This document shows positions 14,161-37,649 of a DNA stretch of 64,000 nt, piece after piece. The DNA lies in IMG/VR virus record IMGVR_UViG_3300020084_000003, positions 1-64,000 of that record; one strand, written 5' to 3'. The translations under genes were made by a program, and so were the position numbers. Numbering within the stretch: position 1 is the stretch's first letter; the number at the start of each line of letters is the position of its first letter. The notes beneath the pieces were generated by a model. That model had not been told where the DNA came from and did not search any database. It worked only from the letters and a program-made list of their open reading frames with translations.

Positions 14161-15378
14161 ATGAGCGTTAGGACTTACATGGTTGGTGGTGCAGTTCGGG
14201 ACATGCTGATGGGCATCGAACCCAAGGATATTGATTATGTGGTCGTAGGCGCTACTCCTGATTACATGGAAAATGTTCTTGGAATGAAACGTGTCGGGCA
14301 GGACTTTCCAGTTTTTCTTGATGAAAATGGCGACGAATATGCTCTGGCGCGTCGTGAGCGTTCTACCGGTGAAGGCTATGTTGACTTTCAATTTGAAGTT
14401 GACGGTGTTTCTCTGGCCGAGGATTTGCTTCGTCGTGACCTGACCATCAATGCAATCGCTAAAAATAAGGACATTGGTAATATCTTTGATCCTTATGGTG
14501 GTCGTGCAGATATCGAAGATAAAATCTTCCGTCCTGTGTCGGATGCTTTCATGGAAGACCCGGTGCGCGTTCTGCGCGTTGCACGTCTACGTGCGCGTTA
14601 CGGCGCGGATTGGACCCTTTCTGACGAGCTACGTATTATGGTAAAAAAGATGGTGAAAAAAGGTGTTCTTTCAAATCTTCAACCTGATCGAGTTTGGAAA
14701 GAAATGAGCCGTGCGCTCATGGAACCAAACCCTCGCCTTTTCTTTGATACTCTATATGAATTGGATGCTTTACATGTAGTTTTTCCTGAGATTTATAAAA
14801 TGTTGACTTCGTTGGAGCCAATTTTTTATCATCCTGAAAAAAATACGTATGAACATACCATGTTGGTTCTTACTCAAGCTGCTAATTTTGGATATGATAT
14901 TGAAACCCGATTTTCATGCTTGATGCATGACATTGGCAAAACTCTGACGACTTTTGATAAATTTCCTGCACATTATGGTCATGATATTAAAGGTGTAGAG
15001 CTTGTTGAACAATTTGGACACAAATATAAAATTCCGAGTAAGATGATTAAAATAGCAAAATTTGCTACCAGATATCATATGTATGGGCATAAGCTTGGAG
15101 AAATGAATCCAAAGACAATAGTAAAAATGTTTGATGAAATCAATCTTTCTTCCCAGAAAATTGATTTCGTTGTAAATCTAAAAAACGTTTTTGAATGTGA
15201 CGAAAGAGGTCGGCTTGGTTACGAACATGTAATTGTAGATGATAAATCAATTATCATTGATTGGGCTAATTCTTATATCGGTGTTAAATTTGATGATGTG
15301 TTTCCTAATGGAGAAACAAATGTTAATAAGATTAAAGATGGGATGTTTAGAAAAAGATGTGCAGCGATAAAGAAATAG
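14161..15378 (+). CDS. cca: tRNA nucleotidyltransferase (CCA-adding) with HD domain
   Basis: VGGAVRD, DIDY, RRDLTINA, EDPVRVLR, HD motif MHDIGK. Confidence 0.95.
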   Translation: MSVRTYMVGGAVRDMLMGIEPKDIDYVVVGATPDYMENVLGMKRVGQDFPVFLDENGDEYALARRERSTGEGYVDFQFEVDGVSLAEDLLRRDLTINAIAKNKDIGNIFDPYGGRADIEDKIFRPVSDAFMEDPVRVLRVARLRARYGADWTLSDELRIMVKKMVKKGVLSNLQPDRVWKEMSRALMEPNPRLFFDTLYELDALHVVFPEIYKMLTSLEPIFYHPEKNTYEHTMLVLTQAANFGYDIETRFSCLMHDIGKTLTTFDKFPAHYGHDIKGVELVEQFGHKYKIPSKMIKIAKFATRYHMYGHKLGEMNPKTIVKMFDEINLSSQKIDFVVNLKNVFECDERGRLGYEHVIVDDKSIIIDWANSYIGVKFDDVFPNGETNVNKIKDGMFRKRCAAIKK

Positions 15379-23441: not shown

Positions 23442-23519
23442 GGTGATGTAGCTCAGTTGGTTAGCAGCGCACCCCTGATAAGGGTGAGGTCGGTGGTTCG
23501 AATCCACCCATCACTACCA
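23442..23519 (+). tRNA. tRNA-Ile(GAU)
   Basis: acceptor GGTGATG/CATCACT, anticodon arm CACCC-CTGATAA-GGGTG, TTCGAAT loop, encoded CCA. Confidence 0.95.
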
Positions 23520-23572
23520 AAAATTATATAATGGAGACATTTATGTGGTTCAAAAAATTGAAGGAGTTTATT

Positions 23573-23926
23573 ATGGGAACTGTTCGCATAAATGATGATG
23601 TTTATGAAGATGTGACCACTGTTAATTTTAATGGTAACAGAACTATTATTATAAATGGTAAAGATGTTTCTGGATCATATAAAACATTTCCACAAATCAA
23701 TGTGACTATTGAAGGTGATGTGAAAATCGGTGTAGTTGATGTTAATACACTTACTGTAAATGGAAGTCTTACAACGGGTAAAAATGTTGACTGTAATGAT
23801 ATTACCGTTTATGGTGATATGACTGTGAATGGTGATGTGGATTGTAATACGTTGCGTGTAGAAAAAGACTTGACATGCGGTGACGTTGATGCTAACACTG
23901 TTAAAGCAGGAAAAATGAATAAGTAG
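23573..23926 (+). CDS. beta-helical repeat protein (bactofilin-like repeats)
   Basis: V.G.V.C..I.V.G repeats; SD AAGGAG before MGTVRI. Confidence 0.6.
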   Translation: MGTVRINDDVYEDVTTVNFNGNRTIIINGKDVSGSYKTFPQINVTIEGDVKIGVVDVNTLTVNGSLTTGKNVDCNDITVYGDMTVNGDVDCNTLRVEKDLTCGDVDANTVKAGKMNK

Positions 23927-23947
23927 GAGATGGTGGTGATTAAATAT

Positions 23948-24032
23948 GGGCGGGATGGCACAGTGGAGGGCCACCAGACTGTAAATCTGGCGCGGTAACG
24001 CATGGTAGGTTCGAACCCTACCCCGCTCACCA
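23948..24032 (+). tRNA. tRNA-Tyr(GUA)
   Basis: acceptor GGGCGGG/CCCGCTC, CCAGA-CTGTAAA-TCTGG, long variable arm, encoded CCA. Confidence 0.93.
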
Positions 24033-24052
24033 ATTATTAAAGGATTTATATT

Positions 24053-24271
24053 ATGCAAATGGAAAATAAACACCCTTTTACGCAAACGGTAAATGTGCCG
24101 CAGCACATTCTTGATAAAGTAAATGCTGCAAATCCTGATAAACCAAAAATGACCGAGCTACGTCTTGTATTTGAACCCGGAACAGAAGTAACGGATGAGT
24201 TGATTGAAAAAGGCGCAATGAGCTTTCACGATTGGACTAAAAACGCTAAACTTGTTTCGGGAGTAGATTAA
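24053..24271 (+). CDS. hypothetical protein
   Basis: 72-aa ORF with SD AAGGA. Confidence 0.7.
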   Translation: MQMENKHPFTQTVNVPQHILDKVNAANPDKPKMTELRLVFEPGTEVTDELIEKGAMSFHDWTKNAKLVSGVD

Positions 24272-24489
24272 TGGAAAAATATGCAAAAAAGTCATTGCGT
24301 TTTGTCGTGAAACTATTAGTGTCTCCTTTTGTTTTATTTGGATGGGGAATGATTTTCTTGTTTCGTTATATTGAATTATTTTACGAGTGGTTATTTGAAG
24401 TAAAACAGTCTGACTTCACGAAACAATTTAATAAAGAATATCATGAAGAATCAATGCTTAAATTTAGGCGTTTCTTCACTCAGATTTAA
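24271..24489 (+). CDS. hypothetical membrane protein
   Basis: 72 aa with one hydrophobic segment; TAATG coupling. Confidence 0.65.
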   Translation: MEKYAKKSLRFVVKLLVSPFVLFGWGMIFLFRYIELFYEWLFEVKQSDFTKQFNKEYHEESMLKFRRFFTQI

Positions 24490-24499
24490 GGGGGTTAAT

Positions 24500-24709
24500 A
24501 TGGATATTAAAGAAATGGTTGCCAATGGTAAACGTGTAAAATTTACTAGGTATTTTGACGGTAATCTCTGGTATGTGACAGAAAACGGCTTTGAGTTTCC
24601 TGTTCCTGTTAGCGACATTGGGAATGCTACATTTGCGGCGGAAGACAAAGCTATGTTATTCATGCGCTATATCAGGAAGCATATTGCCACGGTAACTAAT
24701 AATGGCTAA
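24500..24709 (+). CDS. conserved phage hypothetical protein
   Basis: LWYVTENGFEFPVPVSDIGNATF.AEDKAMLFMRYIRK; SD GGGG. Confidence 0.75.
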   Translation: MDIKEMVANGKRVKFTRYFDGNLWYVTENGFEFPVPVSDIGNATFAAEDKAMLFMRYIRKHIATVTNNG

Positions 24710-24878
24710 AGACTATTTTAATCAAAAATTTGACCAATTTTTAGGTCATAAGCTTAGAATGGTAGAAAGAGATATGCATGGCAGATTAGTGTTGACATTC
24801 GAAGGTGACGATGATATGGTTAGGTCAGTTGCAGTGGCGGCGACCCCTATGGGCGGAATCAATATCAAAGAGGTATAA
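24702..24878 (+). CDS. hypothetical protein (58 aa, not in ORF track)
   Basis: ATG GCT AAA..GTA TAA; fills the gap between neighbours. Confidence 0.55.
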   Translation: MAKDYFNQKFDQFLGHKLRMVERDMHGRLVLTFEGDDDMVRSVAVAATPMGGINIKEV

Positions 24879-24879
24879 C

Positions 24880-25194
24880 ATGTCTTTTATTTTCAACTTC
24901 CAGAAGAACCGTGCGAGAAAGAAAGGATGGAAGAAATTCTTCTATATGGGAAAACTTCATGATGTTTATACTCGCGAAGAACTGCTAGAACTCGAAAGTA
25001 AAAGATTGAAAGAATGTCAAGACGAAGCAGATGGCCTTGTTGTAGCAAGAATGATACGGGAATTTCAATCTGATTTTAGCACAATATATCCAGAACACAT
25101 CCATATTGGTCTTGGTGCTGTTGGCCCTCTACAGACTTTTTTGGGTCTAGCTATTAAAAATGGACACATCACGATAAAAGATGAGGATGATTGA
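24880..25194 (+). CDS. hypothetical protein
   Basis: start placed at MSFIF after SD GAGGT. Confidence 0.6.
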   Translation: MSFIFNFQKNRARKKGWKKFFYMGKLHDVYTREELLELESKRLKECQDEADGLVVARMIREFQSDFSTIYPEHIHIGLGAVGPLQTFLGLAIKNGHITIKDEDD

Positions 25195-25588
25195 TATGTT
25201 ACATATTACACAAGAAGTAATGTCTGAGGCGATGCTGAAAGTCCATTTAGGAGAAGGTCTGGTTGTGCATAGATTTAATGCACCGGATCATGGTCATCAT
25301 CATGACCATCCTTGGCCCTTCAAAAGCACTATTATTCGCGGCGGATATGTAGAAGAAGTTATGAACCGCGATGGAAGTATTGAGACAGTGGAGAGGCTAC
25401 CGGGTCAGCAATTTCTTATAGAACCCATGCACATTCACAGAATAATTCATCTGTTTGAGCCTGTAGTTTGGACTTGCATTGATTTGCAAGGTGAGAAGGT
25501 GCAGGAACCGGGATTTTATGAAGTGCGAGATGGGCAAGTTTGGTCCCGTAGATGGAACGAAAGAGAATTTAAACCGCATACTTTTTGA
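25181..25588 (+). CDS. cupin-fold protein
   Basis: HHHDHPWPF.STIIRGGYVEE and HIHRI cupin metal motifs. Confidence 0.7.
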   Translation: MRMIDMLHITQEVMSEAMLKVHLGEGLVVHRFNAPDHGHHHDHPWPFKSTIIRGGYVEEVMNRDGSIETVERLPGQQFLIEPMHIHRIIHLFEPVVWTCIDLQGEKVQEPGFYEVRDGQVWSRRWNEREFKPHTF

Positions 25589-25599
25589 AAAGGTCTTAT

Positions 25600-25926
25600 A
25601 TGATGAAACTACTAACAGCAGGTTACGGGGCAGGCAATGGCCCCGGAATGACCCTACTACATAAACCTTTTGTCAAAGTAGACCCAAGTATGGAAGATGT
25701 TCTGTGGAAGTATTCTTGTCATATAACTTTTGCAAGGAAAATAAGAATTTGTTTGGAAAACTCTGGTAGATACGATTGTTGGGTGCAACCCGGATGGATA
25801 TATCATCAGTATCATGAGTGTAAAAAAGATTTAGCTGATATTGGGATAAAAATGCTGATTACATCTGTCCCTGAAAGAGACAAATATGTTATTGACAAAG
25901 GAAAAGTTATAGTAGAGAGTGTGTGA
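25600..25926 (+). CDS. hypothetical protein
   Basis: ORF in operon spacing. Confidence 0.55.
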   Translation: MMKLLTAGYGAGNGPGMTLLHKPFVKVDPSMEDVLWKYSCHITFARKIRICLENSGRYDCWVQPGWIYHQYHECKKDLADIGIKMLITSVPERDKYVIDKGKVIVESV

Positions 25927-25928
25927 AG

Positions 25929-26096
25929 ATGGATGGTTATGAAATAGTGCAATGCGCTGTAAAATATTATGTCATATATAAAGACGAGTATAACTGTATA
26001 GGTCAGGTAGGACCATTTGTATCATACGCAGAAGCAGAAGAGAACAGTCTTGATTATGAAAACGCCATTGTTTCAAGGCAGTTAGAGGAAATATGA
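25929..26096 (+). CDS. hypothetical protein (55 aa, not in ORF track)
   Basis: MDGYEIVQ..QLEEI; ATGA overlap with the next ORF. Confidence 0.5.
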   Translation: MDGYEIVQCAVKYYVIYKDEYNCIGQVGPFVSYAEAEENSLDYENAIVSRQLEEI

Positions 26097-26362
26097 CTGA
26101 GGTATTGGTAGTCTATTACGAGCATAATGGTTCTAGTGCAGGAATGCATATCTTGGACCGTATGCCAGAAAATGAAGAAGAATTGAATTATATTTTTGAT
26201 GAGATACTATGCATTCCAAAAGTATATAAAGATTTGTTGACTAAAGGATCAACTAACTTCGAAAGAATGAAACAAATGGGCTATTGGCAGTTTAGTTGTG
26301 ATGAAAATTGGGATGATGCTCAAATAGTGTATTTCAGTATGAAAAAGGTTAATGAGTTATGA
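26093..26362 (+). CDS. hypothetical protein
   Basis: 89-aa ORF with SD GAGG. Confidence 0.65.
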   Translation: MTEVLVVYYEHNGSSAGMHILDRMPENEEELNYIFDEILCIPKVYKDLLTKGSTNFERMKQMGYWQFSCDENWDDAQIVYFSMKKVNEL

Positions 26363-26562
26363 CTGATGAAGAACAACAAAAATTTTTGGATATGGTAAGG
26401 AAAACAATGCCAGATCAAATTGCTAAAGATATTTTAGAAGTAAATGTTGTCGATCCTAATATAATGAAAGAACTTTATGAAAATAGTAAAAGTGAAGAAG
26501 AATTAGTTAAAGAAGGTTTTAAACCTGTTTCTGGTATGAAATTGGTTTGGACAAAAGAATAA
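26359..26562 (+). CDS. hypothetical protein
   Basis: 67-aa ORF with ATGA overlap. Confidence 0.65.
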   Translation: MTDEEQQKFLDMVRKTMPDQIAKDILEVNVVDPNIMKELYENSKSEEELVKEGFKPVSGMKLVWTKE

Positions 26563-26579
26563 AAAGTGTGTTTAATTGA

Positions 26580-26717
26580 GGACGAGAGGGCGCTGTTGGT
26601 TGGTTCCATCCGGCTTTGGACCGAAGAGTATGAAGGCTCTGTGAAGTTCAAACCTTCTAGGTCAAGATTAACCGGAGACTTAATGTCACGTGGGTTCGAT
26701 TCCCACCGGGATTACCA
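26580..26717 (+). ncRNA. tRNA-like RNA with a second tRNA-like module nested in the anticodon loop
   Basis: D-arm shared with tRNA-Lys(CUU); TCCGG/CCGGA stem around a 51-nt insert carrying a TTCAAAC T-loop; variable arm; GTGGG-TTCGATT-CCCAC; ACCA end; acceptor stem poorly paired. Confidence 0.7.
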
Positions 26718-26734
26718 TTAAATACACTTAATAT

Positions 26735-26810
26735 GGCCCCATCGTCTAGTGGTCTAGGACGCTGCCCTTTCAAGGCAGAAACACGGATTCGAATTCCGTT
26801 GGGGCTACCA
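26735..26810 (+). tRNA. tRNA-Glu(UUC)
   Basis: GGCCCCA/TGGGGCT, CTGCC-CTTTCAA-GGCAG, encoded CCA. Confidence 0.95.
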
Positions 26811-26833
26811 ATAAAAATAGTCTACTTTATAGT

Positions 26834-26921
26834 GGACCGAAGGGCGCTGTTGGTTTGCTCCATCTGTCTCTTAAACAGACGCCGAAAGGCTTCGCCGGTT
26901 CAATTCCGGCTCGGTTCACCA
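26834..26921 (+). tRNA. atypical tRNA with CUU (Lys) anticodon and long variable arm
   Basis: GGACCGA/TCGGTTC, TCTGT-CTCTTAA-ACAGA, GCC-GAAA-GGC arm, GCCGG-TTCAATT-CCGGC, ACCA. Confidence 0.82.
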
Positions 26922-26930
26922 TAAAGTATA

Positions 26931-27584
26931 TTAAATTAGGTGTTTAACTCTCTTTCGGATTGCATTATCTGATATTCCAATTTCCCTACTAGTTTTAGAA
27001 AAGTTGAACAAATTAGATTTTAATATCTCTAAAATCTCTTCGGAAGACAAGTCTGACTTCCTAGATAAGTTTTTTATCCTACAATCGTGAGAGCAATAGG
27101 TGCTACTAGCTTTAGACTTTCTAAAAGTATTATTGCAACCTTCTGATGAACATTCTACGATCTTGTATTCTTTTTTATACCCCTTCTTCATATTTTCAAT
27201 ATCATGTAGTTCTGCAAGTCTATATACTCTTGTGTAGTTGCCTGCTCCGACTAACCCACATTTTTTTAATGCGTGCATGGGTGTAGATGATGTTCTCATT
27301 GCGTCAAGTAGTGTGTCGTCATCAACCTTTTTGTTGTGAACCGAGTAGGACGTATTATTTTTACCACAATAAGATTCTGTTTGTGAATGGCAATTTGGAC
27401 ACAAAAATCTTAGATTATCAAGTCTATTGTCGTTGTTTATCCCATTTATATGATCTAAATGTAGAGATATTGGTTTATTATTCCAACTGTCTATGTTGCA
27501 TATAGCACACTTGTAAGGTAGTAGACCATTTTTTACAATTCTGTTTTTAATTTTACTTCTAGAGCATGTCTTTGTAAATTCCAT
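26931..27584 (-). mobile_element. HNH homing endonuclease
   Basis: CAIC..LHLDHINGINNDNRLDNLRFLCPNCH; C-terminal Cys and HTH-like segments. Confidence 0.88.
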
Positions 27585-28603: not shown

Positions 28604-29035
28604 ATGTATTTGATTGACGAACCAACCCAAGAGCAATATAAGATGATAACCGAATCTCTTATTGAAATCCTAAGAGCTTCTAAAATTATGGATTCAAACT
28701 TGGAGGGAAAAGGTATTACTGGACCACAGTTGCTTTTTGCCGCAGAAAGCTTGGTAGATTGTCTTGATGCTCAGGATGACCCAGAAGAAATTTCTTCGCA
28801 AGAAATTGAAGATGCCATTGCTCTGCATGAGGATATGAAATCTGTAGTAGAATGGTCTGTTCCTCTTGCTATCAGAACAATGGAAGATCGTAGACTTCTA
28901 CGTATGAGTGCCGGTCACATGGATATCTACGGGACTTATAAAGATGGAACAAAATACGTAGGGATTTATCAATCAGAGGTAGACCAGATTGAATTTGCTA
29001 ATGACGTTTTGAAAAGAGTGAAGGATACAAGATGA
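28604..29035 (+). CDS. hypothetical protein
   Basis: 143 aa; SD AAGGAG. Confidence 0.7.
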   Translation: MYLIDEPTQEQYKMITESLIEILRASKIMDSNLEGKGITGPQLLFAAESLVDCLDAQDDPEEISSQEIEDAIALHEDMKSVVEWSVPLAIRTMEDRRLLRMSAGHMDIYGTYKDGTKYVGIYQSEVDQIEFANDVLKRVKDTR

Positions 29036-30937: not shown

Positions 30938-31720
30938 ATGGTTTGGTTAGTAGAAAATCTTTTGAATGCCGAGTCTTTCAATGTGATTAAAATGGTAGAA
31001 GCTTTAGAACAAAACGGTGTTGACTATAAACTAGTCAACACCGTTCCCTTTGAGCATGTTTATCTCGATTATGTTGAAGATGTTGATCCTACATTTGTCT
31101 ATGGGTCTACTGTCACTTTAAAAGCTGCTACTAAAATAGGACATGGCAATTTGATAAGGATAGCGCCAAAGGAATCGGAATTATTAGATAATATAGGCGA
31201 TTTATATATGAACAGTGACATGGTTTCGCTTCCTTTTGAAGAATCCACTGAATATATAGAAAGCAGCAATCAAGAATTCTTTTTTGTTAAACCGGACACT
31301 GATTTAAAAAGTTTTGATGGAACAATAACAGACAAAGAAAGATATAAATTCTTCATTGAAAATTCTATGACAACGAACAACTACGACAAGACTACTAAAA
31401 TTTGTATCAGTAGTGTCAAGATTATAGAAAAAGAGTGGAGAGTTTTTGTTGTAGGAAACCAGATATCTACTTATTCTCAATACAGGCAGAATAGAAAGCT
31501 CTTTAAATCTAATAGCATTGATGATGGTGCATATGACTTGGCTAGAAAGTGTATTGACATATACCCATACTCTGATATGATGGTCATAGATGTGGCACTG
31601 ATGGATGATTCGTCATACAAGGTTATAGAATATAACACCATAAATTGCTCTGGTTTGTATGATTCTGATGTTAAAAAATTAGTGTCTGATATTAATTCTC
31701 ATATAAGAGGTTTGAAATGA
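30938..31720 (+). CDS. ATP-grasp domain protein (DUF4343-like)
   Basis: FVKPD..KSFDG, EWRVFVV..SQYR, VIDVA, VIEYN..SGLY. Confidence 0.8.
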   Translation: MVWLVENLLNAESFNVIKMVEALEQNGVDYKLVNTVPFEHVYLDYVEDVDPTFVYGSTVTLKAATKIGHGNLIRIAPKESELLDNIGDLYMNSDMVSLPFEESTEYIESSNQEFFFVKPDTDLKSFDGTITDKERYKFFIENSMTTNNYDKTTKICISSVKIIEKEWRVFVVGNQISTYSQYRQNRKLFKSNSIDDGAYDLARKCIDIYPYSDMMVIDVALMDDSSYKVIEYNTINCSGLYDSDVKKLVSDINSHIRGLK

Positions 31721-32194: not shown

Positions 32195-32224
32195 TTGACA
32201 CCGGAGGTTGTATTGTGTTAGAAC
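32195..32224 (+). promoter_or_regulatory. sigma70-type promoter with extended -10
   Basis: TTGACA-18-TAGAAC with TGn. Confidence 0.5.
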
Positions 32225-32283
32225 ATACATGCGATTCGTGCATATCGTGGCAATCATATCAACACAACAGAAGGATTTATATT

Positions 32284-33198
32284 ATGAAAATTTTGAAAAT
32301 TGCAGCACTTCTACTTCTGACTTCCGTTCCGGTATCGGCTATGGCTAACGGTGATGTTCCAAACTGTAAAGGGACTTCCATTAGTTGTAGTGACAACGGG
32401 AACAACGGAAAAGACGGTAGCACTAACCATTACAACAATACTGTAACTGGTGGTTCAAATAATCAGGGTGACATTAAAGGTGGTTCTGCTGATGGCGGAA
32501 AAAACACCACGGTCAACTCTGGTGGAAACAATTTTAATAGTGGTGGCAATGTAAACAGCAACGCGACCACAAACAGTGGTGCAATTTCAAATAATAGTGG
32601 AGTTAATAACTCTGGCAACTCTTCGAATGTCAACAAAAATTCGCAAGGTCAGGGGCAAAGCCAAGGTCAAGGCCAAGGCCAATCTCAGTCTGCAAGCTCC
32701 AATGCCAGCGGCGGTAATTCTACAAATAGCAATACTCAGGGTAACGCACAATCGACGGTCGTGAACAATTCTTCGATCAATAGGCATTCAGCCGCAAGTT
32801 CGATTGCACCTTCCATTGATGGTTGCGGCGGGACTGCTGGTGGCGGGTTCTCAGCTTCTATTCAGACTTTTGGTTGGGGCGTTTCTGCTGCACGATGCAA
32901 AGGCGACCGTTTTCAACAAATCGTAGTTGCCGAACAACTTGCAAAAGAAGGCAATAGTGCTGCCGCCGCGTATTTGGCTTCTGTTGATCGCCCTTCACGC
33001 GCCGCGCTGATTGCCGCTGGTATTGTCATTGATCGTAAGGCACGTTCTTTCAGAACAAATGAAGCTCGTCGCTGCGATGTTATTTCGCGTCATATGAACG
33101 GTATCACCAAAGAATTTCGGGCAATCCCTGCCGAGGGCTACACTTCGGATCAAGCTCTTAATTCCTGTGCAACTGCTCTAGGTCTTATTATGCAATAA
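32284..33198 (+). CDS. secreted Asn/Gly/Ser-rich protein with Cys-containing C-terminal domain
   Basis: signal peptide MKILKIAALLLLTSVPVSAMA; QGQ repeat; SIAPS..CGG..GFSASIQTFGWGVS. Confidence 0.75.
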   Translation: MKILKIAALLLLTSVPVSAMANGDVPNCKGTSISCSDNGNNGKDGSTNHYNNTVTGGSNNQGDIKGGSADGGKNTTVNSGGNNFNSGGNVNSNATTNSGAISNNSGVNNSGNSSNVNKNSQGQGQSQGQGQGQSQSASSNASGGNSTNSNTQGNAQSTVVNNSSINRHSAASSIAPSIDGCGGTAGGGFSASIQTFGWGVSAARCKGDRFQQIVVAEQLAKEGNSAAAAYLASVDRPSRAALIAAGIVIDRKARSFRTNEARRCDVISRHMNGITKEFRAIPAEGYTSDQALNSCATALGLIMQ

Positions 33199-33202
33199 AA
33201 AC

Positions 33203-33226
33203 AAGGCGGCATTGAATGCCGCCTTT
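33203..33226 (+). terminator. intrinsic terminator
   Basis: AAGGCGGCAT-TGA-ATGCCGCCTTT. Confidence 0.75.
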
Positions 33227-33244
33227 AAACACAAGGAATAACTG

Positions 33245-33874
33245 ATGGAGAATTTGATAAGATTTATGGGTGACACTCACGCCAAACCTATCTTACAAAG
33301 ATATAACATGACCGGGATTTCCCGGTCAATTCACGTTGGCGATGTTGGTATTGGTTTTGGAGTTGATGAAGATATTCTAAAATTGTATCAGGAGATGCCG
33401 GGGAAACACACATTCATCCGTGGCAACCACGATAATCTAAGTGTTATAAAGGAGAAATTTTCAGACTACTGGCACCAAGATGGTAGTTACGAAAAAGAAA
33501 CAAGTATGTTCTTTGTCGGGGGTGCAAAATCTGTGGATTCTTTCAACAGGATTGAAGGTAAAAACTGGTGGCCGGATGAAGAAGTTGACGAAAAAGAATT
33601 TGATAAGCTAATATTAAAATATGCTTATGCCAAACCCTCAATAGTAGTTACCCATGACATTCCTATTCAGGCTGCGGCGAAGATGTATGACAATCATGAA
33701 CCGTTTGATAGTGTTACAGCTAGAAAACTTAGTGAAATGTATGAGGCGCACCAGCCTAAATTATGGGTCGCGGGTCATTGGCATAGAAAGCGCATAAGAG
33801 ATGTTTATGGCACAAAATTTGTGGTCTGCCCTATGGATAGCTTCTTTGATATAGATATTAACTATTTCAAATGA
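33245..33874 (+). CDS. calcineurin-like metallophosphoesterase
   Basis: GDTH, GDVG, GNHD, THD, GHWH. Confidence 0.9.
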   Translation: MENLIRFMGDTHAKPILQRYNMTGISRSIHVGDVGIGFGVDEDILKLYQEMPGKHTFIRGNHDNLSVIKEKFSDYWHQDGSYEKETSMFFVGGAKSVDSFNRIEGKNWWPDEEVDEKEFDKLILKYAYAKPSIVVTHDIPIQAAAKMYDNHEPFDSVTARKLSEMYEAHQPKLWVAGHWHRKRIRDVYGTKFVVCPMDSFFDIDINYFK

Positions 33875-34046
33875 TGAAGGTCATTTAAGTGTTGAAGTCT
33901 CTGACGACATGCTGTATAGTCTTAGGAAGACAGTAGTGGGTAATGATTCACATCTGTCAAAAATGACTTTCAAGGTTGGTGTTAAGTATACCAATAAAAG
34001 TATTGATAATTCTTGGATTAATTACAAGGAGTGAAATAAATATATT

Positions 34047-34319
34047 ATGATGCCAGAAAAACTATATGGATCAAGTAATAAGGAAGTGATCGCGGTCACT
34101 GACAAACCAAATGGCGCTATTTTCTATCAAAAGTTTGGTCTTCTAGTTCAAATCAAAGCTGATGTTGAATATAAAGAAGATGCCAATGGTGATGTATTTG
34201 TCGAAAGACTCATGCACGAAAACAAGCCTTATTACTACATTATTCACTCGGAAGAAGTCATGAATATTAGAAAAGAAGAAAACCCAGAACTTACGCATTC
34301 TAGGTATACTAAAGTCTAG
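34047..34319 (+). CDS. hypothetical protein
   Basis: 90-aa ORF. Confidence 0.6.
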   Translation: MMPEKLYGSSNKEVIAVTDKPNGAIFYQKFGLLVQIKADVEYKEDANGDVFVERLMHENKPYYYIIHSEEVMNIRKEENPELTHSRYTKV

Positions 34320-34345
34320 TTTCATACCTTTTTCCGAGATTTAAA

Positions 34346-34585
34346 TTGGAGAAAGGTATGAATAAGTTAGAAATAAATGTATACGAGAACGGAGTAATAG
34401 GTGTTCGCGGATCAGGAAACAGTTACGATCAATTTTATAAATGGCAGCGACAATTGTTGTCTGCAAAGGACGTAAACTTGTCTTGGCCTTGGCACTACTT
34501 CATTCTCAATAAATCAGAAGAATATAAAGAGCTTTTTGCAAACTACAGAAATAATATATCGTTTGTGAAAAAGGATTATGTATAA
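34346..34585 (+). CDS. hypothetical protein
   Basis: 79-aa ORF (start may be 34358). Confidence 0.55.
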   Translation: MEKGMNKLEINVYENGVIGVRGSGNSYDQFYKWQRQLLSAKDVNLSWPWHYFILNKSEEYKELFANYRNNISFVKKDYV

Positions 34586-34597
34586 GGAATTTTTATT

Positions 34598-35668
34598 ATG
34601 GAACCTCTTCTTGATAGGGACGTTGCTAAACAGAAGACATTTGAGAGAGATGGTTACAAATGTGTGATTTGTGGTCGTGCTGATCTTCCTCTAGACGCTC
34701 ATCATATCATTGAGAGGCGTCTTTGGGATGATGGTGGTTATTATCTGTCAAATTTGGCAACGCTGTGTGACGCTGGTGTTGATGGGTGCCACTACAAGGC
34801 AGAAACTACAGAGTTGTCTGTTGAAGAAATTCGTGAGGCATGTGGAATTGATAAGCCTATGCTACCAGAAGATTTTTATCATGATACTGTGTATGATAAA
34901 TGGGGTAATACCTATTTGGAAAATGGGATGAGGACTAAAGGTCCACTTTTTGACGATGAAAGTGTCCAAAAAGTTCTTAAAAACTGCTTAGAGGAATTTA
35001 CAGATTACGTAAAATATAAAAGAACATACCATGCACCTTGGAGCGAAGGTATTACAGATGATGATCGCGTATTGAAAGACATGTCTATTTTTGAAGGCTG
35101 CGAAGTTGTAGTTACAGAAAAGATGGATGGTGAAAACACCAACATTTACAAAGACTATATCCACGCGCGTTCTGTGGACGGCAGAAGTCACTACACTAGA
35201 AATTGGGCAAAATCATTCGCTTTCGGTTATTTTGCACATAATATTCCTGATAAATGGCGTGTATGTGCAGAGAATCTATATGCGAAACATTCTATTGAAT
35301 ATAAGGATTTGGACAGCTACCTTCTGGCGTTTTCTATTTGGAATGAAAAGAACGAGTGCCTTTCTTGGGATGAAAGTGTGGAATGGTTCAATCTTTTGGG
35401 CATTCCTTATGTCAAAGTTCTATATAGGGGTGTTTACGACGAAACCCTAATTAGGGGCTTGTATGATGCAAGCAAGTATGATACAATGGAGGGATATGTT
35501 GTAAGGAAGGCAGATTCTTTCCATTACAAAGATTTTAGTAAGAATGTTTTTAAATTTGTAAGAAAAGACCACGTGACCACAGAGAATCATTGGATGTATG
35601 GTTACAATAAGACGCACGACCTCAATTCTCTTAAAGAGGGTGTGACTATGGAAAATATTATAAAATGA
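34598..35668 (+). CDS. HNH nuclease domain fused to an ATP-dependent RNA ligase
   Basis: CVIC..DAHH..N..LC..CH at the N-terminus; EKMDGEN (motif I), EGYVVR and FKFVRK at the C-terminus. Confidence 0.85.
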   Translation: MEPLLDRDVAKQKTFERDGYKCVICGRADLPLDAHHIIERRLWDDGGYYLSNLATLCDAGVDGCHYKAETTELSVEEIREACGIDKPMLPEDFYHDTVYDKWGNTYLENGMRTKGPLFDDESVQKVLKNCLEEFTDYVKYKRTYHAPWSEGITDDDRVLKDMSIFEGCEVVVTEKMDGENTNIYKDYIHARSVDGRSHYTRNWAKSFAFGYFAHNIPDKWRVCAENLYAKHSIEYKDLDSYLLAFSIWNEKNECLSWDESVEWFNLLGIPYVKVLYRGVYDETLIRGLYDASKYDTMEGYVVRKADSFHYKDFSKNVFKFVRKDHVTTENHWMYGYNKTHDLNSLKEGVTMENIIK

Positions 35669-35676
35669 GGTAAATT

Positions 35677-36195
35677 ATGAAATATGAAAATGTAAGAGCA
35701 ACACTAGGCAAACTTTTTGGCGAAGAAATTGTTGCAGTGCTTGATGATGAAGAAATTAAAAGTTTGGCAACTGCACTACTTGAAGTTGCATCAAAAGAAA
35801 CACATTCTTTTGGTGTTGGCAGGCCACAAGATACTGCCAATGAGGATATGGACATTTCTGATAAAAAAGTGGTTCCTTTCAAAACCAAAGAAGCTCCTGA
35901 GAAGGAGGTTCCAGATTCAAACAAAATTACCGGAACTGTTTATATGATGAGCATGGAAAAATTTGAAACGGTTAAAAACGATATCTTTAGCAAAGAGGCT
36001 ACATCTGCAAATGTCGGTAATTTGAAAGTTATGACAAAGGACAAATATGTTGCTTTCGTTGTATCAGGTAAAGTTAATCCATCACTAATCAACATCGCTA
36101 GGTTGAAAATCTACTCAGACGTAATTTACGATGCAGACAATCGTAAAGTGGTTAAAGAAAAAACACAAAACCTACATAGAGAACTTTTTAACTAA
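35677..36195 (+). CDS. hypothetical protein
   Basis: 172 aa; SD GAGGT. Confidence 0.7.
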   Translation: MKYENVRATLGKLFGEEIVAVLDDEEIKSLATALLEVASKETHSFGVGRPQDTANEDMDISDKKVVPFKTKEAPEKEVPDSNKITGTVYMMSMEKFETVKNDIFSKEATSANVGNLKVMTKDKYVAFVVSGKVNPSLINIARLKIYSDVIYDADNRKVVKEKTQNLHRELFN

Positions 36196-36674
36196 TGCGA
36201 GAAACGTATGCTCTAGTTTCCCCCGCGCCAGCAGGTTCGGGGGAAAGATACTTTTTCTTAGGTTATCTTAATCCTAAGTATTCTCACATGGTGAACAAAC
36301 AAGATTGTATTTCTATAAATTTGGATTGGGCTAATATATCTACAAGTTATCAAGATAAAATTTCTCCTTTACGGCGAGATATTGTCGAAATACGTAGAAT
36401 TACACCTTATATACCAAGGCTTAGAAATCATATTTTTTTGATTGATGTTGCTAGTTATGAAGAAGGCAAAGATGTTTACCGCAAGATGATTGATATGGAT
36501 ATTGCGTTGGAGGATGATGGATGGTCTACCTTTGTCGGGGGTTTGGATTCAGTAGAAGATATTGTTTTGAATAGACTTGACGCAGACGAATCGCCAGAAG
36601 AAATATATAAGGATTTATTTGATGGCTACCGAGGTATAAGCTACGTTATGAGATGTGCAGTTAAATTTTTCTAG
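36195..36674 (+). CDS. hypothetical protein
   Basis: 159 aa; TAATG coupling. Confidence 0.7.
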   Translation: MRETYALVSPAPAGSGERYFFLGYLNPKYSHMVNKQDCISINLDWANISTSYQDKISPLRRDIVEIRRITPYIPRLRNHIFLIDVASYEEGKDVYRKMIDMDIALEDDGWSTFVGGLDSVEDIVLNRLDADESPEEIYKDLFDGYRGISYVMRCAVKFF

Positions 36675-36690
36675 GAGATTGTGAGGAAAA

Positions 36691-37221
36691 ATGGCTCTTT
36701 ATTATGTCTTTGTAGATATAGACGGTGTTCTTGTAACGACAAGAGCAAACTTCGATGCTATTGAAAATGACTATAAGATGCAGGCAAAATTCGATCCTGT
36801 ATGTATAGATTTTTTCAACTACATAGACAGAACATATGATGGTGTAAAGTTTGTTTTGACTTCAACTTGGAAGACACATTGTTGTGTCGATCTAGATGGC
36901 CCAGATGAAGGTATGGATTTCCATTGGGTTGTTGCGGCTTTTAGAAATGCGGGTTTCAGAGGAAATTTTGCCAAAAATTGGAAAACAGGATATAAAGATA
37001 GTATCACATATCCTAAATGGCAACGTAGCTTAGAAATTGCGAAATATCTTGAAGAAAACAGTTGTGACGATTATATCATTTTTGATGATGAAAACTTTGG
37101 ATATGATAGAATGGCTAAGAAGAGGTTCATTCAGACTAATGAACATGATGGTTTGACTTGGAAAAATATCAAAAATGCAAAGTCTATAATAGGAATGTGG
37201 AACAGGAGAGATGAGTGCTGA
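36691..37221 (+). CDS. HAD-family phosphatase (RNA-repair type)
   Basis: DIDGVL motif I, LTSTW, R..EI..YL, IIFDD, FIQT...GLT. Confidence 0.82.
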   Translation: MALYYVFVDIDGVLVTTRANFDAIENDYKMQAKFDPVCIDFFNYIDRTYDGVKFVLTSTWKTHCCVDLDGPDEGMDFHWVVAAFRNAGFRGNFAKNWKTGYKDSITYPKWQRSLEIAKYLEENSCDDYIIFDDENFGYDRMAKKRFIQTNEHDGLTWKNIKNAKSIIGMWNRRDEC

Positions 37222-37649
37222 AACCTATCACATCATTTAGTGGAGAATACCACTTTTTATCAAATTTCTATCCATGCCAAATCTCATCGTTTGGCGTGGT
37301 TTTTCCCACATTGGAACATGCATATGTTGCACATAAAACTGACGATCAATCTGTTAGAGAAGAAATATCTAAAATAGAAACGCCGGGCAAGGCAAAAAGG
37401 TTTGGTAGGAAAATAGAACTGATTGATGGTTGGGATGGGATGAAGCTTGATATCATGCGCCGTCTAGTGAAGCAGAAGTTTGCAGAGCCAGAATTACTAA
37501 ATAAATTACTGGCTACTCAAGGGCGTGATCTAATAGAGGGCAACTTGCACGGAGATACATTTTTTGGACAATGCCCCTTGGGTGTTGGAAGAAATGAACT
37601 AGGAAAGATATTAATGTCAATTAGAGAAACATATTTATTGTTTAATTAA
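37215..37649 (+). CDS. NADAR/YbiA family protein
   Basis: FLSNFYP, EHAY.A.K, AKRFGR, LIEGN..D.FFG, GRNELGKILM.IRE. Confidence 0.9.
   Translation: MLKPITSFSGEYHFLSNFYPCQISSFGVVFPTLEHAYVAHKTDDQSVREEISKIETPGKAKRFGRKIELIDGWDGMKLDIMRRLVKQKFAEPELLNKLLATQGRDLIEGNLHGDTFFGQCPLGVGRNELGKILMSIRETYLLFN

What the first reader, a model, noticed from the sequence alone, without database searches (positions are those of the whole stretch)
34598..35668. Nuclease and ligase in one polypeptide
Seen: a zinc-binding HNH-type domain (about aa 1-100) in frame with a complete ligase nucleotidyltransferase domain (KMDG, EGYV, K.K) that has no OB domain. Inference: a cut-and-join or end-trimming enzyme, and the best candidate for processing the nested tRNA; the HNH part could instead be only a binding domain.
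Basis: partly seen in the sequence, partly recalled or inferred. Interest (0 to 1): 0.62.

Follow-up and report, generated by a model that had tools for sequence, protein, structure and literature searches.

The report
Phage HNH nuclease–RNA ligase fusion
This freshwater giant-phage gene really does join an intact-looking HNH nuclease to a minimal RNA ligase, but the fusion belongs to a large, already noticed and biochemically untested phage family that most likely mends cut tRNA during infection.

Summary
ORF 34598..35668 (+, 356 aa) encodes three parts:
- an N-terminal HNH zinc-finger nuclease module (aa 1-88);
- a conserved 47-aa middle piece;
- an RNA-ligase nucleotidyltransferase domain (aa 136-335; KMDG, EGYV, KFVRK) with no OB or Rnl2-type C-domain.

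It is not new. It fits PHROG 24030 end to end. More than 5,000 protein clusters match it, mostly from jumbo phages. Iyer et al. 2021 (PMC7824862) already mention Rnl2-type ligases fused to N-terminal HNH domains. I found no biochemistry.

What this work adds:
- The HNH catalytic residues (H35, H36, N52, H65) are about as conserved as the ligase lysine.
- This HNH type hardly ever occurs without the ligase.
- The same ligase core is elsewhere fused to a polynucleotide kinase, HAD and 2H phosphoesterases, a CCA-adding enzyme and topoisomerase IB.
- The gene often sits in or beside phage tRNA arrays and near cREC, HAD_SAK, NADAR and CCA-adding genes.
- Some homologs carry inteins inside motif I.

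The best reading is a tRNA/RNA break-repair ligase with a built-in, probably active nuclease or end-recognition module. The "nested tRNA" link could not be verified.

The parts
34584..34588 (+). AAGGA ribosome-binding-like site 9 nt before the ATG. It overlaps the stop codon of the upstream 79-aa ORF.
   Evidence: Read directly from the sequence.
34598..35668 (+). The whole gene: 356-aa HNH-RNA ligase fusion protein (P0001).
   Evidence: ORF list and translation. PHROG 24030 'RNA ligase' matches at E 4e-130 over aa 4-335.
34598..34861 (+). HNH (beta-beta-alpha-metal) nuclease module, aa 1-88.
   Evidence: HNH matches. Fold matches to McrA, TagI, IscB and Cap5 HNH domains, Z 5.8-6.4.
34661..34792 (+). 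HNH core, C22 to H65. C22/C25/C57 (+C64) form the likely zinc site. H35 is the metal ligand, H36 the general base, N52 the structural Asn and H65 a metal ligand.
   Evidence: Conservation in 286 homologous HNH modules: C22/C25/C57 98-100%, H35 96-100%, H36 95-100%, N52 99-100%, H65 92-100%, C64 only 44-74%. Residue roles are assigned by analogy with colicin E9 and Cas9 (established knowledge).
34862..35002 (+). Conserved middle module, aa 89-135 (P90, W102, G103, G110, R112, G115). It connects the HNH to the ligase core.
   Evidence: Column conservation. It occurs together with the ligase but without the HNH in 12 of 150 representatives. Structurally it overlays the N-terminal part of the adenylation domain of larger ligases (ranges starting at 91-107).
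35003..35602 (+). ATP-dependent RNA ligase nucleotidyltransferase domain, aa 136-335.
   Evidence: PF09414 at E 5.5e-30. Fold matches: T4 Rnl2 NTase 1S68 Z 15.8 (rmsd 2.5 A, 176 aligned), NgrRnl Z 14.6, REL1 Z 14.0.
35120..35131 (+). Motif I K175-M-D-G, carrying the lysine that would be adenylylated.
   Evidence: K175, D177 and G178 are invariant in 86 sequences. Inteins are inserted right after KMDGE in six homologs.
35264..35281 (+). Motif III region C-A-E225-N-L-Y.
   Evidence: E225 is invariant.
35489..35500 (+). Motif IV E298-G-Y-V.
   Evidence: E298 and G299 are invariant.
35552..35566 (+). Motif V K319-F-V-R322-K323.
   Evidence: K319 is invariant. V321 and R322 are conserved at 90% or more.
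35603..35665 (+). Short C-terminal tail, aa 336-356, with lower model confidence. It is no separate domain. The nearly invariant H331-W332 lie just before it, within the ligase domain.
   Evidence: pLDDT blocks of 67-92. H331, W332 and N343 are conserved at 90% or more.
33245..33874 (+). Context gene: calcineurin-like metallophosphoesterase, 209 aa. Candidate end-healing phosphoesterase; the link is not shown.
   Evidence: PF00149 at E 1.6e-8. phrog_1649. Syntenic in L007.
36691..37221 (+). Context gene: HAD_SAK_2 phosphatase, the HAD domain of 'Swiss Army Knife' RNA repair proteins.
   Evidence: PF18143 at E 1.5e-17. It recurs near the fusion in L009, L019, L025, L026 and L043.
37215..37649 (+). 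Context gene: NADAR domain protein.
   Evidence: PF08719 at E 1.9e-21. It lies directly downstream of the fusion in L035, L050 and L083.
14161..15378 (+). Context gene: CCA-adding enzyme-like tRNA nucleotidyltransferase, 405 aa.
   Evidence: PF01743 at E 8e-22. A CCA-adding enzyme lies 1.3-3.3 kb from the fusion in L008, L009, L011, L020, L026 and HGTV-1.
23442..26921 (+). Context: four same-strand tRNA genes (Ile-GAU, Tyr-GUA, Glu-UUC and an 88-nt CUU-anticodon tRNA), 7.7-11 kb upstream.
   Evidence: ARAGORN and Rfam.

Best explanation
The gene encodes a self-contained phage RNA-break repair enzyme, most likely used to reseal cut tRNAs when the host attacks its own translation machinery.

**Ligase half (aa 136-335).** It is a minimal Rnl2-like adenylyltransferase. 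Lys175 would take AMP from ATP, pass it to a 5'-phosphate RNA end, and the 3'-OH end would then attack to seal the break.

**HNH half (aa 1-88 plus the middle piece).** The ligase lacks the C-terminal domain of Rnl2 and the OB domain of Rnl5, so the obligately attached HNH module takes that place. It recognises the broken nucleic acid. Because its catalytic residues are kept, it probably also cuts, trimming damaged or unligatable termini to the 3'-OH/5'-phosphate ends that HNH nucleases produce and this ligase needs.

**Shown here:** domain content, residue conservation, fold, distribution, fusion partners and gene context.

**Inferred:** RNA or tRNA as substrate, HNH activity, and coupling of the two activities.
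For: **Ligase.**
- PF09414 matches at E 5.5e-30.
- All ligase motifs are invariant.
- The fold is closest to the T4 Rnl2 NTase (Z 15.8), NgrRnl (14.6) and REL1 (14.0), above DNA ligases (12 or less).
- Inteins sit in motif I in six homologs, a typical mark of a functional active site.

**RNA-repair role.**
- The same ligase core (47-55% identical) is fused to AAA_33 polynucleotide-kinase-type domains (P0229, P0231, P0262; Actinomycetota cluster).
- It is fused to PolyA_pol/CCA-type NTase + HAD_SAK_1 + 2H phosphoesterase + topoisomerase IB in P0189, and to topoisomerase IB in P0185.
- Neighbours include cREC directly upstream (L008, L011, L020, L030), CCA-adding enzyme within 1.3-3.3 kb (L008, L009, L011, L020, L026, HGTV-1), HAD_SAK_2, NADAR and PTH2.
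- 31 of 65 loci have tRNAs within 10 kb, and 13 are embedded in arrays. tRNA genes lie 2-7 bp from the gene in L046, L053 and L057, almost always on the same strand.
- In 20 genomes, 21% of all tRNAs lie in the 21-kb window around the gene, against about 6% if spread evenly.

**HNH integral and active.**
- Catalytic H35/H36/N52/H65 are conserved at 92-100%, like the zinc cysteines. They are also kept in the archaeal virus HGTV-1 at 28% identity.
- There are only 92 short HNH-only proteins against 5,138 matches in the fusion's length band. Of three examined, one is a frameshift/deletion remnant, one is followed by a transposase, and one stands alone on a bacterial contig next to an integrase.
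- The single-chain model is compact: pTM 0.91.
- Two complete phage genomes (G005, G011) have the fusion but no AAA_33 kinase, cREC or HAD_SAK_2. That fits an enzyme able to work alone.

**Literature.** An RNA-repair assignment of this fusion was already proposed in Iyer et al. 2021.
Against: - No experiment exists for any member. Substrate, HNH activity and coupling are all inferred.
- The nearest HNH relatives by sequence and fold (McrA, TagI, IscB, Cap5) are DNases.
- Trimming both ends of an anticodon-loop break would shorten the tRNA, so simple trim-and-join is not an obvious repair.
- 49 of 150 representatives have the ligase core without the HNH, so the ligase does not strictly need it.
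- No neighbour is conserved across the 66 loci compared: the best recurs in 6.
- The tRNA enrichment is only about 2-3.5-fold, and the baseline is rough because these phages carry 12-72 dispersed tRNAs.
- The inter-domain geometry (H36 to K175) could not be measured.
- The two-chain docking test gave no answer.
Confidence: 0.55

Rival explanations
1. Two unrelated jobs in one protein. The ligase repairs RNA, while the HNH is an offensive DNase used against host DNA or superinfecting phage DNA. This is the suggestion of Iyer et al. 2021.
For: - It is stated in the literature.
- The closest HNH relatives are DNA nucleases: McrA, TagI, IscB, Cap5.
- The catalytic residues are intact.
Against: - This HNH subtype is almost never found without this ligase: 92 against 5,138, and two of the three examined are remnants. 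That is unexpected for an independent weapon.
- No DNA-recognition or modification-sensing domain accompanies it.
- The model is one compact body, pTM 0.91.
Confidence: 0.15
2. The HNH is only a zinc-finger nucleic-acid clamp. It replaces the missing Rnl2 C-domain or Rnl5 OB domain and helps the ligase bind the nick and carry out 5'-adenylylation, with no cutting.
For: - The T4 Rnl2 NTase domain alone cannot perform the full ligation without its C-domain (established knowledge).
- This protein has no other accessory domain.
Against: - General base H36, metal ligands H35 and H65, and N52 are conserved at 92-100% across sequences down to 28-40% identity. A purely structural domain would be free to lose them.
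- Ligase-only relatives of about 210 aa exist.
Confidence: 0.12
3. A nick-sealing enzyme for DNA transactions. The HNH nicks, and the Rnl2-like ligase reseals, duplexes whose 3'-OH strand carries ribonucleotides (RNA primers, ribo-patches, R-loops) during phage replication or repair.
For: - Rnl2- and Rnl5-type ligases seal duplex nicks with an RNA 3'-OH strand (abstracts listed: PMC4408790, PMC5397189).
- IscB/Cas9-type HNH domains cut DNA within RNA:DNA hybrids (established knowledge).
- An ATP-dependent DNA ligase lies within five genes in 5 loci, and about 3 kb upstream in HGTV-1.
- In the window the gene lies 3-6 kb from gp47/gp46 recombination nuclease genes.
Against: - Most fusion partners of the ligase core are RNA-end-healing modules.
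- The association with tRNA arrays and CCA-adding enzyme points to tRNA.
Confidence: 0.07
4. Programmed cut-and-join RNA processing. The HNH makes a specific cut in a phage tRNA precursor or other RNA, and the ligase rejoins the ends, as in enzyme-driven splicing or editing.
For: - Frequent embedding in same-strand tRNA arrays, with tRNA genes a few bp away.
- HNH products (3'-OH/5'-P) are directly ligatable (established knowledge).
- Odd tRNAs occur in this genome: the 88-nt CUU tRNA and an intron-type tRNA-His candidate at 281863-281981.
Against: - No interrupted or nested tRNA could be verified in the window.
- Many fusion-bearing loci have no tRNA within 10 kb: 34 of 65.
- No conserved RNA partner was seen.
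Confidence: 0.06
5. A selfish mobile gene. The HNH works as a homing endonuclease that spreads the gene between phage genomes, and the ligase is cargo or limits damage.
For: - The neighbourhood is highly variable.
- tRNA regions are known landing sites for HNH homing genes. A separate HNH ORF sits at 26931-27584 next to the window's tRNAs.
- Inteins in homologs show that mobile elements visit this gene.
Against: - No DNA-binding modules typical of free-standing HNH homing enzymes were found.
- Both halves show strong purifying conservation across bacterial and archaeal viruses.
- There is one copy per genome.
Confidence: 0.05

Closest known systems
HNH-fused Rnl2-type RNA ligases of jumbo phages (PHROG 24030). 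Noted by Iyer et al. 2021, Viruses 13:63, citing Burroughs & Aravind 2016. Examples: Salicola phage SCTP-2 gp101, Caulobacter phage CcrSC, Acinetobacter phage ME3 gp200, Halovirus HGTV-1 gp233.
   Same: Same architecture from end to end. Identities are 59%, 52%, 48% and 28% over aa 4-335. The PHROG profile match is E 4e-130.
   Different: Nothing architectural. This is a new sequence from a lake-water T4-like jumbo phage; the nearest metagenomic relative is 82% identical. The family has no biochemical characterisation that I could find.
T4 RNA ligase 2 (gp24.1, PDB 1S68/2HVQ) and kinetoplastid REL1
   Same: Best structural match of the ligase domain: Z 15.8, 15.2 and 14.0. Same Pfam family, PF09414. 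Same motifs I, Ia, III, IV and V.
   Different: It lacks the Rnl2 C-terminal domain needed for nick recognition and step 2. Motif V is KxxR rather than KxK. Sequence similarity is too low for HMMER against PDB to list Rnl2. The same genome carries a separate, more T4-like 346-aa ligase.
Rnl5 nick-sealing ligases (Naegleria NgrRnl 5COT, Deinococcus DraRnl)
   Same: The accessory domain is N-terminal to the NTase domain. NgrRnl is among the nearest solved relatives by profile, E about 1e-3, and by fold, Z 14.6.
   Different: The Rnl5 N-domain is an OB fold. Here it is an HNH zinc finger plus a 47-aa module.
Multidomain RNA repair enzymes: 'Swiss Army Knife' proteins, ligase-kinase fusions, bacterial Pnkp/Hen1, T4 Pnkp + Rnl1
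   Same: The identical ligase core occurs in them: P0189 with CCA-type NTase, HAD_SAK_1, 2H and TopoIB, and P0229/P0231/P0262 with the AAA_33 kinase. The logic is the same: end-processing module plus ligase.
   Different: The partner here is a nuclease rather than a kinase or phosphatase. T4 Rnl1 (PF09511) is a different ligase family and was not matched.
HNH domains of IscB/Cas9, McrA/TagI and CBASS Cap5
   Same: CxxC...HH...N...C..H signature and beta-beta-alpha-metal fold, Z 5.8-6.4 with 16-24% identity.
   Different: Those are DNA nucleases embedded in other architectures. This subtype has its own conserved ERRLW-x2-GGY and AE-x-T segments and is tied to the ligase.

Membership tests
ATP-dependent RNA ligase, Pfam RNA_ligase PF09414 (covalent nucleotidyltransferase superfamily) | Profile match above the curated cut-off | tested here: met
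   105.2 bits against a cut-off of 27, E 5.5e-30, aa 169-321.
ATP-dependent RNA ligase, Pfam RNA_ligase PF09414 (covalent nucleotidyltransferase superfamily) | Motif I KxDG lysine nucleophile plus motifs Ia, III, IV and V | tested here: met
   K175, D177, G178, R191, E225, E298, G299 and K319 are invariant in 86 sequences.
ATP-dependent RNA ligase, Pfam RNA_ligase PF09414 (covalent nucleotidyltransferase superfamily) | Adenylyltransferase fold | tested here: met
   AF2 model with pLDDT 95. Z 15.8 to 1S68, 14.6 to 5COT, 14.0 to 1XDN.
ATP-dependent RNA ligase, Pfam RNA_ligase PF09414 (covalent nucleotidyltransferase superfamily) | Lysyl-AMP formation and 3'-OH/5'-PO4 RNA sealing | not testable with these tools
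   Needs purified protein.
Rnl2 family in the strict sense (T4 Rnl2) | C-terminal all-helical domain after motif V, required for nick binding and step 2 | tested here: not met
   About 35 residues follow motif V and no extra domain appears in the model. Alignment to 2HVQ stops at chain residue 233.
Rnl5 family (DraRnl/NgrRnl) | N-terminal OB-fold domain | tested here: not met
   The N-terminus is an HNH. Its fold matches are HNH domains only.
HNH / beta-beta-alpha-metal endonucleases | His-Asn-His catalytic signature with an adjacent cysteine zinc site | tested here: met
   C22, C25, H35, H36, N52, C57 and H65 are present and 92-100% conserved. The fourth ligand C64 is variable, 44-74%.
HNH / beta-beta-alpha-metal endonucleases | Pfam HNH PF01844 above the gathering score | tested here: inconclusive
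   20.0 bits against a cut-off of 21.4. However, PHROG HNH families match at E 6e-8, the NCBIfam IscB HNH segment at E 4e-8, and the fold at Z 6.0-6.4.
HNH / beta-beta-alpha-metal endonucleases | Metal-dependent strand cleavage leaving 3'-OH/5'-phosphate | not testable with these tools
   Needs an enzyme assay.
HNH-Rnl fusion family (PHROG 24030) | Full-length collinear match covering both modules | tested here: met
   E 4e-130, aa 4-335 on profile positions 3-333 of 342. The 120 best homologs cover 92-100% of the query. ESM Atlas clusters match at TM 0.88 and 0.81, 86-90% viral.
Free-standing HNH homing endonuclease | Accessory DNA-binding modules and sporadic, insertion-like presence | tested here: not met
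   No DNA-binding Pfam domain. The gene is one conserved unit across distant viruses. Mobility itself was not tested.
T4-type tRNA repair pathway (Pnkp + Rnl1) | Rnl1-type ligase (PF09511) with a bifunctional kinase-phosphatase | tested here: not met
   No Rnl1 match. The genome has a separate P-loop AAA_33 kinase next to an HD protein, plus cREC and HAD_SAK_2, but no RtcB, 2H or KptA.

The most novel reading that the evidence does not exclude
The fusion is a stand-alone "heal-by-nuclease" RNA repair machine. The HNH would convert unligatable breaks into 3'-OH/5'-phosphate ends on the same bound RNA, and the ligase would seal them at once. Such breaks include 2',3'-cyclic phosphate/5'-OH ends, or ends damaged to defeat repair. 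This pathway would need no kinase or phosphatase.

It would explain four observations:
- the HNH is obligately attached;
- its active site is conserved;
- some complete phage genomes carry the fusion without any recognised end-healing enzyme (G005, G011);
- the gene sits inside tRNA arrays.
Probability: 0.15. Interest if true: 0.75.

Novelty: new member of a known kind. Interest (0 to 1): 0.4.

Why it matters
Cutting tRNA is a common bacterial anti-phage defence (for example PrrC, RloC, PARIS, retron-Septu and OLD), and phage RNA repair is the counter-move. This fusion family is very large, with thousands of clusters and 433 IMG/VR loci, and spans bacterial and archaeal viruses.

No member has been assayed. 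The physiological role of Rnl2-type ligases in phages is also still open.

If the HNH really prepares ends for its own ligase, that would be a new repair logic and possibly a useful one-protein RNA cut-and-seal reagent. If it does not, the protein is simply one more accessory RNA ligase. As a genome-scan finding it is real but not a discovery: the architecture is already in PHROGs, in RefSeq annotation and in one comparative-genomics paper.

Tried and rejected
- **DNA search.** Megablast of 33000-37500 against the phage collection gave no match. The phage has no close sequenced relative; its gp46 is only 40% identical to cyanomyovirus gp46.
- **Source paper.** Burroughs & Aravind 2016 could not be read because it is not held. 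Its content is cited only through Iyer et al. 2021.
- **Literature.** Four searches for biochemistry on HNH-ligase fusions found nothing. Two further paper queries were malformed and did not run.
- **Docking.** Complex prediction with HNH+middle against the ligase core returned "no answer" (score 0.00, controls not run). It counts neither for nor against binding.
- **Second ligase.** An hhalign comparison of the family profile with the genome's second ligase gave nothing.
- **Ligase-domain tree** (113 rows, quick method):
  - It is star-like, with 54 of 110 forks open.
  - HNH-bearing and HNH-less forms interleave, but supported branches do not exclude a single origin, so the history of the fusion is unresolved.
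  - Rows with split or partial ligase hits were left out, including the intein-bearing ones.
- **Nested tRNA or 138-nt RNA.** It was not found:
  - ARAGORN with introns up to 200 nt and Rfam give four uninterrupted tRNAs, two of which fit only the tRNA-Sec model, below threshold.
  - The relaxed-threshold candidate at 28788-28930 was rejected.
- **Conserved operon partner.** This idea was rejected. Clustering of 644 neighbour proteins from 66 loci gave no family present in more than 6 loci.
- **Cellular genomes.** The single-protein scan found only 3 MAG contigs, so the distribution in cellular genomes was not properly measured.
- **Expression.** No RNA run holds the region. The DNA is in lake-water metagenomes.
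Full report
**1. What is there.**

The window is the first 64 kb of a 284,776-bp IMG/VR virus record rated complete. It is a T4-like jumbo phage found in lake-water metagenomes. It carries gp55-, gp47- and gp46-like genes at 38.0-41.4 kb. Its gp46 is only 40% identical to cyanomyovirus gp46, and there is no close DNA relative in the phage collection.

The finding's coordinates are exactly one ORF: ATG 34598 to stop 35668, + strand, 356 aa (P0001). An AAGGA site lies 9 nt upstream. The ORF sits in a long same-strand run of tightly packed genes.

**2. The two domains are real.**

*Ligase.*
- Pfam RNA_ligase PF09414 matches aa 169-321 at E 5.5e-30.
- In an 86-sequence alignment (A1), K175, D177, G178 (motif I), R191 (Ia), E225 (III), E298-G299 (IV) and K319 (V) are invariant.
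- Motif V reads KFVRK, with R322 nearly invariant, so it is not a strict KxK.

*HNH.*
- The signature is C22-x2-C25, D33-A-H35-H36, N52, C57 and C64-H65.
- The generic Pfam HNH model scores just under threshold, 20.0 against 21.4 bits.
- Phage HNH PHROGs match at E 6e-8, and the HNH segment of IscB at E 4e-8 and 1e-4.

*Structure.*
- The AlphaFold2 model built on A1 is very confident: pLDDT 95.3, pTM 0.91.
- An exhaustive structure comparison puts aa 135-327 closest to the T4 Rnl2 adenylyltransferase domain (1S68, Z 15.8, rmsd 2.5 A, 176 residues), then NgrRnl (Z 14.6) and REL1 (Z 14.0). DNA ligases score 12 or less.
- The same comparison puts aa 3-111 on the HNH domains of McrA, TagI, IscB and Cap5, Z 5.8-6.4.
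- There is no OB domain and no Rnl2-type C-domain. About 35 residues follow motif V.

**3. It is a member of a large family that has already been noticed.**

- PHROG 24030, annotated "RNA ligase", matches aa 4-335 at E 4e-130.
- Full-length relatives occur in Salicola phage SCTP-2 (59%), Ralstonia RsoM2USA, the Caulobacter CcrSC group, Acinetobacter ME3 (48%) and the haloarchaeal virus HGTV-1 (28%). RefSeq already labels the HGTV-1 protein "RNA ligase / HNH endonuclease domain".
- The 90%-cluster database holds 5,138 matches in the length band, and the best 120 all cover 92-100% of the query.
- The exhaustive 50%-cluster search gives 2,076 hits.
- IMG/VR has 433 loci.
- ESM Atlas clusters of the same shape (TM 0.88 and 0.81) are 86-90% viral.
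- Iyer et al. [quoted passage not shown] They suggest that the HNH attacks foreign DNA while the ligase repairs RNA.
- I found no biochemical study.

**4. Architecture survey.**

Among the 150 best 50%-cluster representatives:

| Architecture | Count |
|---|---|
| HNH + middle + ligase | 86 |
| Ligase core only | 49 |
| Middle + ligase | 12 |
| HNH + ligase | 3 |

Some members of the shorter classes may be partial ORFs.

The ligase core is also found fused to other domains:
- AAA_33 kinase domains (P0229, P0231, P0262; an Actinomycetota cluster);
- topoisomerase IB (P0185);
- a 2,792-aa "Swiss Army Knife"-type protein with a PolyA_pol/CCA-type nucleotidyltransferase, HAD_SAK_1, a 2H phosphoesterase and topoisomerase IB (P0189).

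Most of these partners are RNA-end-healing or strand-cleaving modules, which supports an RNA-repair role for the core. A ligase-domain tree is too poorly resolved to say whether the HNH fusion arose once.

**5. Is the HNH a working, coupled part?**

- In 286 homologous HNH modules, H35 (96-100%), H36 (95-100%), N52 (99-100%) and H65 (92-100%) are conserved as strongly as the zinc cysteines C22, C25 and C57 (98-100%). Only C64 varies.
- All of these are retained in HGTV-1 at 28% overall identity. A domain kept only for binding would not be expected to hold its general base and metal ligands this tightly.
- A search with aa 1-135 alone found just 92 short proteins. Three were examined:
  - one is a frameshift/deletion remnant followed by the rest of the ligase (L016);
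  - one is followed by a transposase (L018);
  - one stands alone in a Burkholderia contig next to an integrase (L017).
- So this HNH subtype is in effect dedicated to this ligase. That argues against two unrelated jobs and for action on one substrate.
- The compact single-chain model (pTM 0.91) agrees.
- A two-chain docking test gave no answer and is not used as evidence.

**6. Context.**

*In the window*:
- R2K ATP-grasp gene (30938-31720);
- calcineurin-like metallophosphoesterase (33245-33874);
- HAD_SAK_2 phosphatase (36691-37221);
- NADAR protein (37215-37649);
- CCA-adding enzyme at 14161-15378;
- four tRNA genes at 23.4-26.9 kb.

*Elsewhere in the genome:*
- 28 more tRNAs;
- a cREC gene;
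- a P-loop AAA_33 kinase next to an HD protein;
- a second, longer PF09414 ligase next to a NAPRTase-family (PF04095) phosphoribosyltransferase gene;
- no RtcB, 2H or KptA.

*In relatives:*
- cREC lies immediately upstream in L008, L011, L020 and L030/L037.
- A CCA-adding enzyme lies 1.3-3.3 kb away in L008, L009, L011, L020, L026 and HGTV-1.
- NADAR is directly downstream in L035, L050 and L083.
- PTH2 takes the place of HAD_SAK_2 in the syntenic L007.
- No neighbour is general, however. Clustering 644 neighbour proteins from 66 loci gives at most 6 loci per family: R2K 6, ATP-dependent DNA ligase 5, NT5C 4, NADAR 4.

*tRNA genes are the most frequent companion.*
- 31 of 65 dereplicated loci have a tRNA within 10 kb, and 22 have ten or more.
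- 13 loci have tRNAs on both sides.
- 6 loci have a tRNA within 500 bp, down to 2-7 bp. Nearly all are on the same strand.
- These phages carry 12-72 dispersed tRNAs, so the baseline is high. About 23% of the bases of this genome lie within 10 kb of a tRNA.
- In 20 genomes, 21% of all tRNAs fall in the 21-kb window around the gene, against roughly 6% if spread evenly.
- I rate this a real but moderate (2-3.5-fold) association.

*Co-occurrence with end-healing enzymes is incomplete.*
- In the same 20 genomes, an AAA_33 kinase is present in 14, cREC in 10 and HAD_SAK_2 in 10.
- Two complete genomes with terminal repeats, G005 and G011, have none of the three.

**7. Mechanism.**

*Best supported (0.55).* An RNA, chiefly tRNA, break-repair ligase:
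- K175 is adenylylated, AMP is passed to the 5'-phosphate, and the 3'-OH attacks.
- The fused HNH plus middle module supplies the substrate-binding function that Rnl2 and Rnl5 obtain from their C-terminal or OB domains.
- The HNH probably also cleaves, producing the 3'-OH/5'-phosphate ends the ligase needs.
- The domain facts, conservation, distribution and context are shown here. Substrate, nuclease activity and coupling are inferred.
- The weak point is chemical. Trimming both sides of an anticodon-loop break would shorten the tRNA, so the real HNH substrate may be something else, such as a blocked terminus, a 3' end or a hybrid.

*Rivals.*
- an independent DNase weapon (0.15);
- a binding-only zinc finger (0.12);
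- nick-and-seal on ribonucleotide-containing DNA duplexes (0.07);
- programmed cut-and-join RNA processing (0.06);
- a selfish homing gene (0.05).

**8.

I could not locate a nested tRNA or a 138-nt RNA.
- ARAGORN, with introns up to 200 nt, and Rfam report four uninterrupted tRNAs. Two of them (Tyr-GUA and the 88-nt CUU tRNA) fit only the tRNA-Sec model, below threshold.
- The only relaxed-threshold candidate (28788-28930) lies inside a 143-aa ORF, has a mismatched acceptor stem, folds at z -1.13 and has no Rfam match.

The general tRNA link is supported. The specific one is not.

**9. Verdict.**

The gene is a new member of a known, widespread but biochemically untouched family. It is worth an enzymologist's afternoon but is not a surprise for specialists.

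Noticed in passing
Homologs P0124, P0132, P0136, P0138, P0139 and P0253 (not in the window). The insertion point corresponds to window 35135, after E179.: Six homologs carry a 180-360-aa insertion exactly after KMDGE of ligase motif I. The junctions are canonical for inteins: extein ...KMDGE | C... at the start and ...VHN | C(T/S) at the end. These are inteins in the ligase active site, and one of them sits in an HNH-less ligase.
   Followed up: partly
window 26834-26921 (+): An 88-nt tRNA with a CUU (Lys) anticodon, a long variable arm and an encoded CCA. The general tRNA model misses it and only the tRNA-Sec model matches, at 28 bits. A class-II-shaped Lys-anticodon tRNA is unusual. It could be a decoy or replacement for a tRNA-Lys targeted by host defences.
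   Followed up: partly
window 26931-27584 (-): A 217-aa ORF with a Pfam HNH match (27378-27509) lies directly beside the tRNA pair. It looks like a free-standing homing endonuclease in the tRNA region and is unrelated to the fusion's HNH subtype.
   Followed up: no
window 30938-31720 (+) and loci L025, L030, L058, L069, L073, L087, L088: An R2K-clade ATP-grasp protein (PF18299/PF14243) is the most recurrent protein-coding neighbour of the fusion: 6 clustered loci plus the window. Its function is unknown.
   Followed up: partly
window 32215-33198 (+): A 327-aa ORF with a signal-peptide-like start and a long Gly/Ser/Asn/Gln-rich low-complexity region. It has no Pfam match and lies in a locally higher-GC stretch (0.42).
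   Followed up: no
own genome G000:C1 about 192560-193600 (-) and 159720-160700 (-), outside the window: A second PF09414 ligase of 346 aa (KLHGTN motif I, with a C-terminal extension) lies next to a NAPRTase-family (PF04095) phosphoribosyltransferase gene. A 174-aa P-loop AAA_33 kinase is immediately followed by a 153-aa HD-domain protein, a possible end-healing pair. A cREC gene lies at 174442-174732 (-).
   Followed up: partly
own genome G000:C1 281863-281981 (-), outside the window: With introns allowed, ARAGORN calls a tRNA-His(GUG) with a 25-nt insertion inside the large tRNA array. It was not verified.
   Followed up: no
P0185 (940 aa) and P0189 (2792 aa), metagenomic proteins: The same ligase core is fused to a eukaryotic-type topoisomerase IB catalytic domain. 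In P0189 it also carries a CCA-type nucleotidyltransferase, HAD_SAK_1 and a 2H phosphoesterase. This is a second case of a strand-cleaving enzyme joined to this ligase.
   Followed up: partly
loci L049, L064, L068, L071, L076 (cluster of about 454-aa proteins) and HGTV-1 (L102:1-771): An ATP-dependent DNA ligase (PF01068) lies within five genes of the fusion in 5 dereplicated loci, and about 3 kb upstream in the archaeal virus HGTV-1. That virus also has a Band-7 protein and a CCA-adding enzyme nearby.
   Followed up: no
L016:5001-5968: A split allele: the HNH + middle ORF is followed, in another frame, by the ligase remainder, and aa 128-149 are missing. It was seen on 15 contigs from several samples, so it is a circulating decayed copy rather than an assembly error.
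   Followed up: partly
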